From assembly GCF_964204865.1 (NCBI RefSeq), contig NC_135262.1, positions 3,596,001 to 3,660,000 on the forward strand: a DNA stretch of 64,000 bases. The letters run 5' to 3'. Of this stretch, positions 27,917 to 34,814 are shown one piece after another. The DNA is from Styela clava. Taxonomy: Eukaryota. Numbering within the stretch: the first letter of the stretch is position 1; every line of letters begins with the position of its first letter. The notes beneath the pieces are model-generated. The model saw only the letters and a list, made by a program, of their open reading frames with translations, was not told the DNA's origin and made no database searches. A program made the position numbers and the translations under genes.

Positions 27917-28164
27917 TTCGTTGATTGTTCAGTGATAGTTCCACCCAATTGCCCTATGATAGGCGTTTAGAGTCGTAGTCGGCTTTTTAAACTGCCGAGA
28001 GTCTTTGTCAAAATTCAGGCTTTCAATTCGTGATTAAAAAAGCCAAATAATTCCCAAAAACTAAAAAATCATTTATTTATCAAGCGTTATTAACAGTCTA
28101 TTAAGAAGGCTACAAAATTTAATTTTTTTGGAGTTGCGGAAACCCCATAGGGCATAGGCTATAT

Positions 28165-28468
28165 CAGTAGTTCCCAAACGGGAGCACTTGGCCCAGCAAG
28201 GGCAGTTGGAGGTGGCCACAATGCTAGGCGCTAATTTCACTTTTCCCCTTACAGACAAACTCTCCGTTTTTCCTAGTTTCCTCGTTTGATAAGGTTATTT
28301 CCTATGGTGTTTTACCTTAGTTGGGCAATAAATGTTTGCACCTAATGGAATTCGGAATCTACCAATCATAATAACACAATAAATACTACTGGAATGATAA
28401 ACAGTGCGTCATGAGTGCTAAAAGCTTTCGGAAAGCAGCCACGAACCATAAAAGGTTTGGAACCACTG
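28165..28468. mobile_element. hAT MITE
   Basis: TIR CAGTAGTTCCCAAAC / GTTTGGAACCACTG; TSD degenerate; second copy at 10992-11190. Confidence 0.75.
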
Positions 28469-28998
28469 CTATATATAATGATCAATGCCTGTTTACATCA
28501 CAAGTAAAAGGCGTGAAAAAAACCTTACCGTATTCTACAGCGCTTCAGACGCATGGAAGTGAAGAATCCATAACAGGCGATTTTATAAACCAAAGGCGAC
28601 AGTACAAAGTTCAATAATTCTGTCTACACGTATAAAAACCTTCTGGGAAATGAGCCTATGGAGACCAAAACGGAATGCGGATTATTTGAGAGCGCCAAAC
28701 GGTGTTTAATTTCTAATTTTCTATAAATAAATCATTTTTTTGCGATCATTGCATATGCTGGTTTCTTATCTGTCAACATTGATACTAATTAAAGCTGAAA
28801 TACATAGGTCGCAAGTTCAAGTCACAGCCTATCCACAGGGGAGATGTATTTATATGTATATTAACAACTTGTTAATACTTGTTTAACTTGTTTTGCAGAC
28901 ACTGACATGGCGACATTGCAAATCCGGAAAAACCGCAATAATCAGAAATAACTAGAATCAATAGGTCATGTGGCGTTAAGGGCTACAGCGAGAAAGTA

Positions 28999-29040
28999 TA
29001 GGGTGTCCGTAAAGTCTCTTTACAAATAAAAAAAATTATC
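28999..29040 (+). mobile_element. Tc1/mariner TIR fragment
   Basis: TAGGGTGTCCGTAAAGTCTCTTTACAA matches the family TIR. Confidence 0.65.
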
Positions 29041-30210
29041 AGTTTTAAAATTTTATATCACAGCTCAATACAAGACTCTTCACATATTGCCACTTGTATA
29101 TAAGAAATTACCCTTATGGCCAAAAAAGTCATTTTTGTTTAGAAATATACTATTTATTACACCTGTTTAAAAGAGTGAAACAGATGATGGCGTGTATAAG
29201 CGCTGTTCTAGATTAGCGTTACTTCGAATGTCTTGTGGCGCCAACGTTAGAACGCTAATCACTCACTCAATTTACCCGATGTAATAGTTTTTTTCTAAAA
29301 TCCCAAAACAAAGTTGAAAACAACCAGTAATTAAAGATACCAACTTAACCATATTAACAAATTAGTGGTAACTGTAAATAAACGGCCAGGCGGATTCGTT
29401 ATTTTTGCAAGCTCGATTAGAGATCAATTCACTGTTAAAGATTGGTATTGATATTTGAGAGCAAACCGAACCTAAATTTTGGCATACGTTTGTCATCAAT
29501 GACAATTCATGTTTACTTGGCCTATCCAGCATACACTGCCTATCTTCCCCTCAGTCTTATTTCAGATCAGAAGAAAGAACTTATGTTACTCACTATAATA
29601 ATAAAAGAACAAGAAACAAAGTGTGACCTTACTTACGAACTCTGCTGCTGTCAAACCATCTTCCAGTACAAACGCTCTGATATAATTCGATTGATTTGGA
29701 ATGAAAGAAATAACAAAGTACAAAGTAATTAGACTTCAGTTGTTTGCTTAATGTTTAATCAAAGCCTGCATGTCATATTTTGCTTTGTAGTTGCAGTGCA
29801 TATCATAGTTCATTTGTATTGTTTTGATTCGTCGTCTGTGAGTTATCATACGTTTCCTTTCAATGAACCCTTCTGGGTTAACGCTTTGTTATGCCTGGAG
29901 TTACCCATTTTGGCAATTAACACTTTTAATAAAATAGGTAATAAAATGGGTCTCTAATGATCATCATCATGAAAAAGTGTTGCAAGCTCTTTGAAAGAGG
30001 TTATAGGATTAAAGTAATAAAACGTTTGAGGAAAGCTGACTGGAAATATCAACTTTTGAGTCGATTGTAGATATAGAGTTTTACTCAATTTCGTAACTAT
30101 TTTAATTTATCTAATTTTTCCTTGTTGTCCAATTGCTGTCCGATAATAAGTTATATCGATTTTCAAAATTTGGAGCGCATAATTTGAACGATTAATATAA
30201 CGTTTAATAG

Positions 30211-30443
30211 GGTACTCCCGAAGTATGTGAACCGAGATGGCGGACACCATGACGTAGTTTGTGTACCAGGTTAGGGTTAGGCAATAATTTTAGATACAAA
30301 TACTACGGGAGTCACTTGACTAGTCCCCGAACTCGTAATAGAATTAAAATAAGGAAAATTGGAATAAAATTATGGCCTAATTCTATCCTGGTACACATAC
30401 TACTTTCCGGTGCCCGCCATCTTGGTTCACATACTTCGGAATA
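30211..30443. mobile_element. Merlin-like MITE, subfamily A
   Basis: Long TIR GGTACTCCCGAAGTATGTGAACCGAGATGGCGGACACC...GTACCAGGTTAGGGTTAGGC; right TIR more decayed. Confidence 0.9.
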
Positions 30444-30622
30444 ATTTAATGTGAATGCGACCTTTGACCCGGCAAAACACCGTCGAAATTAATAAATACC
30501 GAGGTACTGTACTTTGAACTTATAATAAATTTAATATAATAATATAATATTGAAAATATGATCTGTGGGAGATTATATCAGCCACTCAAAATTTAATTAA
30601 CTCTTTCCTCTTCTCTATTTTA

Positions 30623-30815
30623 CAGGATGTCCATAAAGTCTCTTTACAATTTCAATTTTTTTATTAAGTCAGTTCTCACTATTTTTTAAACAGGTTTGTT
30701 GTTTTTTAATCAGTAATTGTTTAAGTATTTTTACTTCATTTAATACATCTGTGAGGGTCAAAACAATATATGGTATAAATAAATTCCCTTTGCAATTTTA
30801 AAAAATTTTAAGACT
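30623..30815 (+). mobile_element. Tc1/mariner MITE
   Basis: TA-CAGGATGTCCATAAAGTC...; colinear with 13271-13477; right end eroded. Confidence 0.8.
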
Positions 30816-31367
30816 TGAATCGAAATCCAAATCGAAACAAAAATTTTTTTTTAAATATGAGCCATATATATAACTTTTGCGGTGGTGAGCAAAGTTTTCA
30901 TCTATTGACACAAATTTTTAATCAAATAATGATTAAATTGGACCTGGAGATGGGAAACTCATCGAGTACAGAATATTAAAAAGCTTGGATAACATTAATA
31001 ATAGGAAATTGAAATATTCCAAAAAAGCTATCTGTCAAATCAACTATACGTATTCTTCTACTATGCTTATGCTTTAATATTTGCCTGAGAAAGTCTGAAT
31101 TTGATGCGGGAAACCGTGACAGACTAAAATTTGTGAATTTTGCCATCTTACCATTTGGCAATTTCATAACCGGTGTTCGCGTTCGCGCTGCTTACTTGTA
31201 TATTAATTCTATAGTAAACATCCAATTAACGGATGCGGTTTTTGAAGACACAAAGGCGACAAACTTTGACTTTGTAATATTAACTAAGAACCGCAAATAA
31301 ATCACTAGGGAGATGAGAACTCATTCATCGCTTTCTCATTAACAGCAATCGGATAAGTAAATTATTC

Positions 31368-31719
31368 GTTACTCCTGAAGTATGTGAACCAAGATGGCGG
31401 ACACCGGAACGTAGAATGTGTACCAGGCTAGGGTTAGGACTTAATTTTATTCCAATTTTCTTTAATTTAGTTCTATTACGAGTTCGGGGACTAGCCAAGT
31501 GACTGCAGTATTTGTACCTGAAATTATGGCCTAACCCTAACCTGGTACACAAACTACGTCATGGTGTCCGCCATCTCGGTTCACATACTTCGGGAGTACC
31601 CTATTAAACGTTATATTAATCGTTCAAATTATGCGCTCCAAATTTTGAAAATCGATATAACTTATTATCGGACTACGTTTCGGTGTCCGCCATCTTGGTT
31701 CACATACTTCGGGAGTACC
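31368..31719. mobile_element. Merlin-like MITE, subfamily A, with a templated insertion in its right TIR
   Basis: TSD AATTATTC/AATTATTT brackets 31368-31719; 31529-31673 is the exact reverse complement of 30138-30282. Confidence 0.9.
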
Positions 31720-33926
31720 AATTATTTTATAGAACATAAAGTGTACCATTGTGTCGTGCCCCTCGGCACTTCATTATTAGGTTTCTGACAGCATAAAAAC
31801 AGCTTGAAAAATTTGTCTCTTGTCCCATTCAAAAGGCCAATTTAAAAATGCAAACTTTTATAAAAGAAAAAGATCAGCACGGCCGTACATTTAATCATTT
31901 TATTCGTTTTGAAAAGCCGTGAATGTTTAAATTTTTTCTCGATTATACAGTTGATCATTGCTGTATGTACATGAGTCCTTTGTCAATTTCACAACTACAA
32001 ACATCTTTGACAACCTTGCTTTTATTGCAAAATGTCGTTAAATTACTTTGTAGTTTGCACTATATCTTTTATTTCGATTTAATCAAATCATATCAAATCG
32101 TTCGTAATAGGTAAGTACAGTATTAAGTATATAGTTCGCAAGCTAGGCCACACTCAATTTCATGTACTCATCGTTCGTATGGGTTTCTCATTCTACAGTA
32201 AAATAGGAGCGACGGGGAGTTTACTTTAAAAATAGTCAGTACCAGAAAGTTTAAAATACTATTTTTTTAAAATCTCCAATTTGGTAAAAACAGCAAAATT
32301 TGCCGAAATTTTGTGTTAGCTTGTACCTGATTGTTATATTATTCTTTTAGTATCAATTGCTGAACAAAAAATGAACTACAAAACGCACACCGTGAAATAT
32401 TTGGGCTTATCTGATGTTCTATTCTTGTGAAATAAATAAGTACTAAACATAATAAGGACGAAAAGAGTTCACGATTCAACGGACTCAATTCACCTGTCAC
32501 ATCCCTTGATTTTCATAAGCAGATGAAAATTTATGAAAATTAAAGCTCAACAAGTTCACAACATGCAATCAAGCAATTAATAGAAATAGGCATCATGTAA
32601 TAACACAGTAGTAGTTTGTTTTACAAACTCAGAACAGTTCAATAAGGAAATTTTCTGACAAAAAAGATGATAAACAATTTGAATTTTGTAGCAAATTATT
32701 CTGTACTATTGTTGCAGTAAACTGTTAATAATATGACAAAAAACAGTAAGGATTAAAAAACACCTCTCGAGTCTTCATCTTATTCAGAAAAATATTAAAT
32801 TTACATTTTTGTTGCTTCACAGTAATAAAACAGCGAAAGAAAATTAATTTAGCAGTAAAACTGTCATTAATAATAATAAAACCGCGGGTATTAGTATAAT
32901 AGTTATAATAGAACAGTTAGCTTTAGAAAGTAGAAGAATCTCCAAATATATTCCAATTTTTCTTCTAGAAAGTCAAAGGATTTACTTGAAAATGAAACAA
33001 AATTTACTATTTTTTGTTTCTTCACAATAAGCCAACACCCACAACAAACAATGCAAAATCCTACTAAATAATGCTGTCACTTGGGAATGCTAATCATTCA
33101 AAATCCTCTAACATTAACAATTGACGTCAATAATTAGTGCAATCTTATTTAAAGAGCAAGTTTCTTTTTTTTTATCGCGTCGGTTGAAAATTCAGGTAGC
33201 TGTATGACTCTTTATGTAAAACTCTTGTTGAATGAAGCTTCTGATTGTTTCATGATTGCATGATTGGACGTGTAGAATCTTGTTCAACAGCATTTGTTTG
33301 AGTGGAGTGCATATTTGCTGGTTTTTGTTCAAACCGGATGATTTATATAAATGGAAAAAAAGAATTTGTTACCTGAAAATGAAATTTTCCTTTCATTTAT
33401 ATTTTATTTGGTTTTGAACGATGTCAGGGATGAGTTCTTGGAATTGAATTTGAATTTACAGTTATTTTTTTGCAATATTATCAATATTTATTCAACCTGT
33501 TTTTTCTTCTTCAGAATTTGCGTATTATTTTTACGTGTTCTTGGGCGCCACTAGAAGAACAATTACTAAGATGCGGTAAAATTACAAACTTCTGTCTAAC
33601 ATTCTTATTCGTTCTCAAATTTACATCTAAATCTCGTTGAATTTTTGTTTGTTTTCAGTAATCAACTTGCTTTCAAACATTGCAGTTATTATGCAGACAT
33701 TTAATTAAGTGATAAATAATAAACAGAGTTGTCTCGCGGTGTATGTCTCGCCTCAATGAAAAATTTGTATCTTGCTACAATACTTCTTACGTGCTAATAC
33801 TACCACACACATGTGTGTTGTTTCGTAAGCTAGTGAAATATGTGATAGTTTTCGTAACACAAATAGGTAAAAAAATATTTAACTATTGGTTTTTAGAAGT
33901 TTTAGATAAAACTGACATATATTGTG

Positions 33927-34814
33927 CAGGGGTTCTCAAACTTTTGGTGTTGCGGAGCCCCTGGAAAGGTTGACTATTATTCGCGGAGCCCCAAAAGAAA
34001 TGTTAAAATTGTAGCTTTCCGATAAATATTCCTGAGTAAGTTAAAAGTACTTAACTTAATTTAAAGGCTAAACCTTTTTTTAATGGGGTTAATGCAAGTC
34101 ATAAATAAATCAAAATTTCAAAGATAAATTATATATACTCTTACTAAAGCTGTAAATTTGACACTTGACAAACATATTAATAAACTAGGGGTCGAATCTT
34201 TTCCCTTTTGACAATTTCGGAAGACTTAAAACTAAAAGGCTGCTAATAACGTGCGCGATTGCATTTTGTTACAATCACCGATAGTTTTCGTCAGCATGGC
34301 ATGTTAAACATCTTTACGCCAGTGTTTATTCTCCCTAAATCAAAAATTTTCTTCGGCTTATACACGTATTGTTCCACAATGACGACGATGATTGCTTTTT
34401 TGTTCTCGTGGGGAATTATGAGTTCAATGTGAAAAACATGTTACCATATATAGTCATCGGCGACGAAATGCTAAAATAATAATTAATAATAAAGAGGTAA
34501 ATCCGCAACTCAAATTTCTTGATTGAAAAACGGCATTCCAAAATATTAAATTTCAAAATAAAAGATCACACTATAAGTTTGGTTTTAGCAGACTCACGTC
34601 AGATTAAAAACGCTTTTATAGGCATTGTAAATCACAAAATTTGGTGTAATGTTCGAGGCTATAATGTTGTCAAATTTTATCAAAGCTGTTATTGTTTCTT
34701 TGAACAGTTACAAAACTAGTCATTATTTTGAAAAGTAATCGGATAGCTCACGGAGCCCCTAGGTTTCTCTCGCGGAGCCCTGGGGCTCCGTACGGAGCAC
34801 TTTGAGAACCTATG
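33927..34814. mobile_element. Non-autonomous hAT element, about 890 bp
   Basis: TIR CAGGGGTTCTCAAA / TTTGAGAACCTATG; CGGAGCCC subterminal repeats at both ends; no clear TSD. Confidence 0.8.

What the first reader, a model, noticed from the sequence alone, without database searches (positions are those of the whole stretch)
30138..31719. Perfect 145-bp inverted templated insertion: one MITE copied its neighbour's end plus 73 bp of unique flank
Seen: 31529-31673 is the exact reverse complement of 30138-30282. That tract comprises 72 bp of the left TIR of the MITE at 30211, including its private variants (ACCGAGATGG, CACCATGACG, TAGTTTGTG), and 73 bp of non-repeat flank (30138-30210). The sequence then returns through a 2-bp AC microhomology to the recipient's own TIR (31674-31719). 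The recipient's 8-bp TSD (AATTATTC/AATTATTT) still brackets the whole, so the recipient has two right ends. The two MITE bodies differ at many other positions, so the tract is much younger than the insertions. Inference: a homology-primed template switch (FoSTeS/MMBIR or aborted synthesis-dependent strand annealing) between inverted repeats about 1.3 kb apart. It yields a TIR-bounded composite that could mobilise captured host DNA, a snapshot of how MITEs may acquire new internal sequence.
Basis: partly seen in the sequence, partly recalled or inferred. Interest (0 to 1): 0.75.

Follow-up and report, generated by a model that had tools for sequence, protein, structure and literature searches.

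The report
Templated inverted insertion inside a MITE
A small transposon copy carries an exact inverted copy of its neighbour's end plus 73 bases of the neighbour's flank, the scar of a polymerase that switched templates, and other copies of the same family carry similar scars.

Summary
Window 31529-31673 is the exact reverse complement of 30138-30282, 145 of 145 bases.

- **Copied stretch.** It is 72 bp of MITE A's left inverted repeat plus 73 bp of flank. That flank occurs only twice in the 377-Mb assembly, both times here.
- **Age.** A's three variants occur together in 0 of 328 other repeat arms. Outside the tract A and B are 87% alike.
- **Junction and polarity.** The tract rejoins B's own right end through a 2-bp AC overlap. 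B's 8-bp target duplication brackets the whole, so B is the recipient.
- **Reading.** A 3' end inside B paired with the inverted neighbour A, was extended out of A into its flank, and rejoined B. I cannot tell break repair from fork switching.
- **Recurrence.** Four other loci carry an inverted copy of one flank against the opposite end (21, 22, 56 and about 148 nt; 89-100% alike). Three of them are among 64 ordinarily sampled copies.
- **Not shown.** No listed read or contig crosses the junctions. Contigs of another sample suggest the insertion is absent there. No captured flank has moved.

This is a clean new example of a known kind of event.

The parts
30138..30210 (+). Donor flank: 73 bp of non-repeat DNA left of MITE A
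   Evidence: Exactly 2 matches in the 376.8-Mb assembly, here and at 31601-31673. In another sample it is continuous with upstream unique DNA (contigs 30019-30238 and 29800-30238).
30211..30282 (+). Donor: outer 72 bp of MITE A's left TIR, with three variants that no other copy combines
   Evidence: 0 of 328 arms carry all three.
30211..30444 (+). MITE A. Its left end is intact. At its right end the last 7 bases (GAGTACC) are replaced by AATAA. Candidate TSD: TTTAATAG (30203-30210) / TTTAATGT (30445-30452), 6/8.
   Evidence: 90% to a family copy.
31360..31367 (+). Left target-site duplication of MITE B (AATTATTC)
   Evidence: 8-bp TSDs at 6/8 or better in 42 of 64 family copies.
31368..31528 (+). 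B's own left TIR and body, inverted relative to A and 87% like A
31529..31600 (+). Copied tract, part 1: reverse complement of A's left TIR, which gives B an inner second right end
   Evidence: exact.
31601..31673 (+). Copied tract, part 2: reverse complement of A's 73-bp flank. The last two bases (AC, 31672-31673) are the return microhomology.
31674..31719 (+). B's own outer right TIR, with family-type bases where A has its variants
   Evidence: I5, I6; 96-98% to a family copy.
31720..31727 (+). Right target-site duplication of B (AATTATTT)

Best explanation
This is a real and very recent templated insertion. MITE B (originally about 233 bp) and MITE A lie inverted to each other, 1.2 kb apart. 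A single strand that contains both can therefore pair them along their whole length. A DNA 3' end lying in B between 31528 and 31551 (present coordinates) paired with A. A polymerase extended it leftwards along A, through A's left TIR and 73 bp into A's unique flank. The new strand then left A at 30138-30139 and rejoined B's own right TIR at ACTACGT through a 2-bp AC overlap. That point lies 1-24 bases beyond the departure point. The net gain is 119 bp, and B now has two right ends. Shown: the exact copy, the unique donor, the junction, the polarity and the age contrast. Inferred: the polymerase step and the source of the 3' end. The source could be a double-strand break repaired by strand invasion, over-synthesis and end joining. 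It could also be a stalled fork that switched template. I rate these about equal.
For: 145/145 inverted identity. Flank present only twice in the genome. A-specific variants inside the tract: 0 of 328 other arms carry all three. 87.3% A/B identity outside the tract. B's TSD brackets the composite, and B's outer TIR keeps family-type bases. A's flank is colinear with upstream DNA in an independent sample. A strand 30138-31516, -31528 or -31552 folds with 137-171 B bases paired to A and none within B. Its 3' end is paired or one base from it, which leaves exactly the copied stretch as template. The same kind of scar exists elsewhere, with arms 89-100% alike, so some are old enough to have mutated: L051, L016, L019, L110.
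Against: No listed read or contig crosses 31600/31601 or 31673/31674. The one raw-read run had almost no depth on unique DNA. In sample S2 the contigs run unbroken across 30138. By de Bruijn graph logic this suggests that the second context of the flank is absent there. That fits a young polymorphism, but it also fits an error of this assembly. The folds are thermodynamic only. The one ending at 31552 includes 24 already-copied bases.
Confidence: 0.75

Rival explanations
1. Assembly or library artefact: the 119 extra bases are not in the animal's DNA.
For: No spanning read was seen. Contigs of sample S2 pass 30138 without a branch (X2 record 11, X3 record 17). The assembly holds no second haplotig of the locus to compare.
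Against: The structure returns precisely to B's own TIR with a microhomology and stays inside the TSD, which chimeric reads do not produce. A consensus assembly needs many agreeing reads. Similar scars at other loci have diverged arms (89%, 95%, 99%), so the process is biological. S2 carries a different haplotype here (3 SNPs in 220 bp).
Confidence: 0.1
2. Transposase-driven event: alternative transposition using ends of the two neighbouring elements, giving a composite insertion.
For: Two inverted elements lie 1.2 kb apart. A's right end is damaged. Earlier notes of the scan report hAT excision footprints in this genome (unchecked).
Against: The copy carries A's end still joined to A's flank, so that junction was copied and not cut. 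The break in B lies 46-48 bp inside the TIR, not at its terminus. There is no new TSD.
Confidence: 0.04
3. Reverse polarity: B's inner segment is the original, and A's end plus flank was copied from it.
For: A lacks a clean TSD (TTTAATAG / TTTAATGT at 6/8, and only if 5 odd bases are skipped).
Against: The 73 bp continue without a break into unique DNA left of 30138, also in another sample. In B they sit between two right ends, inside B's TSD.
Confidence: 0.03
4. The 73 bp is a normal part of a longer family variant, or B is two adjacent insertions.
For: Doubled ends exist elsewhere through nesting or tandem duplication (L034, L061).
Against: The 73 bp has only 2 copies in the genome. The inner unit 31368-31600 has no TSD of its own (AATTATTC against CTATTAAA).
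Confidence: 0.01

Closest known systems
Repair-mediated duplication by capture of nearby chromosomal DNA (Pace et al. 2009, PMC2671141; passages read)
   Same: A transposon copy is interrupted by a sequence that has one other copy in the genome, close by (they found 824 of 1,136 donors within 5 kb). The breakpoints show microhomology of 2-9 nt. They attribute it to synthesis-dependent strand annealing.
   Different: Here the invasion is primed by about 230 bp of homology between two inverted transposon copies, so the copy begins inside the repeat and runs out into the flank. The animal is not a vertebrate.
TIR-to-TIR template switching during gap repair, proposed for the mosquito MITE Goblin (Yang et al. 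2013, PMC3814204; passages read)
   Same: A newly made TIR strand pairs with the complementary TIR and is extended. The ends are then joined at microhomology. The authors link this to MITEs with long TIRs.
   Different: Their case is an inferred ancient birth of a family from an autonomous element. Here donor and recipient are both still present, the copy is exact, and it extends into host flank.
Short template-switch mutations at inverted repeats (Loytynoja and Goldman 2017, PMC5453318; Monttinen and Loytynoja 2022, PMC8794818; search listing and abstract starts only)
   Same: A brief switch to a nearby inverted template and back, which creates or perfects hairpin stems.
   Different: I did not read their size range. 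This event copies 145 nt from 1.3 kb away.
Abortive gap repair and filler DNA at Ac/Ds and P elements (Rubin and Levy 1997, as cited in PMC3814204; otherwise recalled)
   Same: Interrupted repair synthesis with template switching captures foreign stretches inside an element.
   Different: Those events follow excision of the element. Here the break point lies inside a TIR of an element that stayed in place.
Fold-back priming at short inverted repeats next to a break, leading to palindromic duplication in yeast (recalled, not looked up)
   Same: A resected 3' end snaps back on a complementary repeat and copies its own flank in reverse.
   Different: There synthesis goes on to make large palindromes. 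Here it stops after 20-150 nt and rejoins.

Membership tests
Repair-mediated duplication / templated insertion | The inserted sequence has a single donor elsewhere, usually within a few kb | tested here: met
   2 matches in the genome, 1.3 kb apart
Repair-mediated duplication / templated insertion | Microhomology, filler or deletion at the breakpoints | tested here: met
   2-bp AC at 31672-31673 = 30138-30139. The other breakpoint lies within homology.
Repair-mediated duplication / templated insertion | An empty (pre-insertion) allele exists in another individual or species | tested here: inconclusive
   S2 contigs pass 30138 unbranched, which suggests absence there. No contig of an ancestral B could be told from other family copies.
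Miniature inverted-repeat transposable element with 8-bp target duplication (hAT-like) | Short, non-coding, high copy number, terminal inverted repeats | tested here: met
   Unit about 236 bp. At least 3041 and 2200 first-look candidates. TIR arms 75-78 nt in A and B. Only short ORFs.
Miniature inverted-repeat transposable element with 8-bp target duplication (hAT-like) | 8-bp target-site duplication | tested here: met
   6/8 or better in 42 of 64 copies, 8/8 in 14
Miniature inverted-repeat transposable element with 8-bp target duplication (hAT-like) | An autonomous partner with a hAT transposase and the same ends | not tested
   The superfamily label rests on TSD length and on unchecked earlier notes.
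Transduplication / Pack-type capture (host DNA mobilised between TIRs) | Host fragment lies between transposon ends | tested here: met
   The 73 bp lies between two right ends and inside B's TSD.
Transduplication / Pack-type capture (host DNA mobilised between TIRs) | The composite has transposed: further copies with their own TSDs | tested here: not met
   No third copy of the 73 bp. Likewise for the captured flanks of L051, L016 and L110.
Assembly artefact | No reads of the source individual span the junctions | tested here: inconclusive

The most novel reading that the evidence does not exclude
The long TIRs of this MITE family act as built-in fold-back primers. The two arms look near-perfectly complementary over about 79 nt in the majority bases of the alignment. 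Roughly one copy in twenty has had one flank copied in reverse against its other end. That lengthens the palindrome and would add up to more than a hundred such scars genome-wide. This would be a family-intrinsic route to longer TIRs, to new hairpin loci, and occasionally to elements that carry host DNA.
Probability: 0.3. Interest if true: 0.6.

Novelty: new member of a known kind. Interest (0 to 1): 0.4.

Why it matters
Donor, recipient, both junctions and the target duplication are all still readable, and the copy is unmutated. That makes this an unusually clean natural example of how a polymerase can run out of one transposon copy into host DNA and carry that DNA into another copy. The wider point is that the scar recurs: 3 of 64 sampled copies have one, plus two found through doubled ends, one of them this finding. 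Long-TIR MITEs may therefore be steady local sources of small inverted duplications. This can be tested with a genome-wide census and with population data. It does not show that captured DNA moves.

Tried and rejected
1. Flank as a standard family part: rejected.

2. Chance: rejected.

3. Hairpin opening of the adjacent flank (P-nucleotide type palindrome): rejected. In L016 the inserted 21 nt match the opposite flank beyond the TSD, not the adjacent one.

4. Insertion into the centre of a pre-existing palindrome: rejected for L016 and L019. The 8-mers next to the two ends are reverse complements of each other, not direct repeats.

5. L019's flank as a fold-back element: its relatives are single-orientation hits at 84% or less, while the two arms here are 99% alike.

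6. L138 looked like a sixth case (144-nt arms, 99%). Its 20-mer occurs 5 times locally and 7 times elsewhere with one mismatch, so I dropped it as a complex array. L085 (13 nt with one mismatch) is doubtful and not counted.

7. Doubled-end scan.
- 4 exact matches and 99 matches at 3 mismatches or fewer.
- I looked at 68 of the 99: L033-L062, L063-L082 and L123-L140. The other 31 were not fetched.
- Most hits are satellite arrays, an internal look-alike motif, nesting or tandem duplication.
- Only the window locus and L051 are clean inverted-flank cases.
- L055 and L059 are direct tandem duplications of end plus flank.

8. Reads did not settle reality.

9. Rfam found nothing in 28000-34000. There are no sizeable ORFs there.

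10. No alternative haplotig of the locus exists in the assembly.

11. Paper supplements were not opened. Pace et al. list their events in supplementary tables that I did not see.

Full report
**Observation.** The stretch 31529-31673 is the exact reverse complement of 30138-30282, 145 of 145 bases. The repeat finder reports the pair as 167 nt at 98% (30138-30304 / 31507-31673). The extra 22 nt carry 3 mismatches and are ordinary similarity between two copies of one repeat family. By coordinates, 31529-31600 copies the outer 72 bp of the left TIR of the element at 30211. The stretch 31601-31673 copies the 73 bp to its left.

**The family.**
- The element is a MITE of about 236 bp with ends GGTACTCCCGAAG...CTTCGGGAGTACC.
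- The assembly (376.8 Mb, 380 contigs) gave at least 3,041 and 2,200 first-look candidates with two different queries. The 40 scored each time were 89-93% alike.
- Eight-base target duplications match at 6/8 or better in 42 of 64 copies analysed. I fetched 69 copies, and in 5 the ends were not found by my motif.
- In the majority bases of the alignment, read by eye, the two TIR arms look complementary over about 79 nt.
- The superfamily was not tested. The 8-bp duplication, and unchecked earlier notes of the scan, point to hAT.

**Copies A and B.**
- A (30211-30444) and B (31368-31719) are inverted relative to each other.
- B is bracketed by AATTATTC / AATTATTT.
- B has two right ends. The inner one ends at 31600 and the outer one at 31719.
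- The outer piece (31674-31719) has the family's usual bases where A has its own variants.
- A's right terminus is damaged: GAGTACC is replaced by AATAA.

**Not a family part, not chance, and young.**
- The 73-bp flank has exactly two matches in the whole assembly, both here. That search skips very common words, which does not matter for a sequence found to be rare.
- A's three variants (ACCGAG, CACCATGACG, TAGTTTGTG) occur singly in 2, 0 and 3 of 328 other TIR arms. All three together occur in none.
- Outside the tract A and B agree at 137 of 157 aligned columns, 87.3%. At that rate 72 identical in-element bases have a probability of about 5e-5.
- The tract is therefore much younger than either insertion.

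**Polarity.** B is the recipient.
- Its target duplication encloses the composite.
- The inner unit 31368-31600 has no duplication of its own.
- The 73 bp run on into unique DNA left of 30138.
- In an independent sample the A context is continuous: contigs 30019-30238 (run X2) and 29800-30238 (run X3), both carrying SNPs at 30066, 30081 and 30091.

- The raw Hi-C reads (X6) had depth 0 to 1.7 on unique DNA, and 99% of the laid reads ran on into other sequence. They come from other family copies and say nothing about this locus.
- X2 and X3 are contigs of one sample. None of the listed pieces crosses 31600/31601 or 31673/31674, and over 28,000 pieces were not listed.
- Their contigs cross 30138 without a break. 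In a de Bruijn graph a second context for the flank should force a break there. I infer that the insertion may be absent from that sample.
- This inference depends on how those contigs were simplified.
- It fits a young polymorphic allele, but it leaves an assembly error open.
- The assembly holds no second haplotig of the locus.

**Mechanism.**
- The last base that is B's own is 31528. The first base that is clearly A's is 31552.
- The return is at ACTACGT (31672-31678). In an unaltered element that motif follows directly after the departure zone.
- The event is therefore a nearly clean templated insertion with a net gain of 119 bp.
- A strand running from 30138 to 31516, 31528 or 31552 folds, with DNA parameters, so that 137, 147 or 171 bases of B pair with A and none pair within B. 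The 3' end is paired or one base from it. That leaves exactly 30138-30258/30283 as template ahead of it.
- The fold ending at 31552 includes 24 bases that were already copied, so the other two are the fair tests.
- The 3' end may have come from a break in B's TIR, repaired by strand invasion, over-synthesis past the homology and end joining at AC. It may also have come from a stalled fork. The sequence cannot tell these apart.
- A transposase cut is unlikely. The copy keeps A's end joined to its flank, and the break lies 46-48 bp inside B's TIR.

**Recurrence.** Four other loci carry an inverted copy of one flank against the opposite end.

| Locus | Place | Inverted flank | Arm identity | Flank elsewhere in genome |
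|---|---|---|---|---|
| L051 | C5, about 7.7248 Mb | 22 nt of its own left flank | 103-nt arms, 95% | 22-mer occurs twice, both here |
| L016 | C4, about 8.977 Mb | 21 nt of the right flank | 21/21 | 21-mer occurs twice, both here |
| L019 | C6, about 22.758 Mb | about 148 nt | 127 nt at 99% | a dispersed repeat; other copies 84% or less |
| L110 | C14, about 6.2695 Mb | 56 nt | 89% | found nowhere else |

- L051 has the same architecture as B. Its inner right end is followed by the inverted flank, the return uses a 4-bp CACA overlap into the true right TIR, and TAATAAAG / CAATAAAG bracket the whole.
- In L016 the inverted flank sits between the left target duplication and the left end.
- L016, L019 and L110 come from 64 copies chosen only by similarity score, so 3 of 64 carry such a scar.
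- L051 and the window locus came from the scan for doubled ends: 99 matches, of which I inspected 68.
- Arm identities of 89, 95, 99 and 100% show that the process is biological and has run over time.
- Direct tandem duplications of end plus flank also occur (L055 with an AC overlap, and L059).

**Comparison with what is known.**
- The event matches repair-mediated duplication as described for vertebrates: a unique donor within a few kb, insertion into a transposon, and microhomology of 2-9 nt (PMC2671141, passages).
- It matches the TIR-to-TIR template switch proposed for a mosquito MITE (PMC3814204, passages).
- It resembles short template-switch mutations at inverted repeats (PMC5453318 and PMC8794818, listing only).
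- It is a new, very legible member of that kind, not a new kind.
- My four literature searches did not turn up a report of inverted flank copies as a recurrent feature of a MITE family. Four keyword searches cannot show that none exists.

**What is not supported.** The composite shows no sign of having moved. The captured 73 bp has no third copy. The same holds for three other captured flanks. B's left terminus has two substitutions.

**Verdict.** Mobilisation is unsupported. Reality in the sequenced individual is still to be shown by spanning reads. Interest is moderate. It rests mainly on the recurrence, which can be checked by a census.

Noticed in passing
window 30434-30452 and 31350-31367: After A's truncated right end come the bases AATAATTTA. 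The reverse complement of B's left flank reads GAATAATTTA, about 10 nt shared. This may reflect a target preference (ATAATT-like duplications recur) or a second small repair event. It is unexplained.
   Followed up: partly
L004:1460-1520 (G000:C19, about 16.470 Mb): A family copy whose right end is doubled, with a 15-nt filler (AATCGAC twice) between a truncated end and a full terminal 25 nt. No matching target duplication.
   Followed up: partly
L055:1464-1600 (G000:C10, about 20.655 Mb): A shorter related MITE with a direct tandem duplication of 37 nt of flank plus 33 nt of left TIR. The junction has a 2-bp AC overlap.
   Followed up: partly
L034:1285-1640 (G000:C6, about 18.137 Mb): A copy inserted at GAAAATTG inside a related element. 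Its right 93 nt are then tandemly duplicated through that shared 8-mer.
   Followed up: partly
G000:C1:26684485-26684912; C14:2788821-2806724; C8:3114755-3144209; C2 (several): Tandem or dispersed arrays whose unit contains the MITE end motif, for example a 137-bp period on C1. These look like MITE-derived satellites.
   Followed up: no
window 30614-30835: Contig depth rises to the thousands (up to about 97,000) here in runs X2 and X3, so another high-copy repeat lies between A and B.
   Followed up: no
window 31717: In sample S2 the contig from B's right flank stops 3 nt inside the element. The left-side contig runs 30 nt in. This may mark a variant at 31716 in that sample.
   Followed up: no
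window 30296-30439, 31381-31438: Run X1, labelled as a different organism, holds short contigs 95% or more like the MITE but none of the unique flanks. The family seems to be shared with another species.
   Followed up: no
L138 (G000:C10:20295645-20297174): A local array in which MITE halves and a 20-mer 'flank' alternate in orientation, with 5 exact copies in 1.5 kb and 144-nt arms at 99%. It is a complex rearrangement hotspot.
   Followed up: partly
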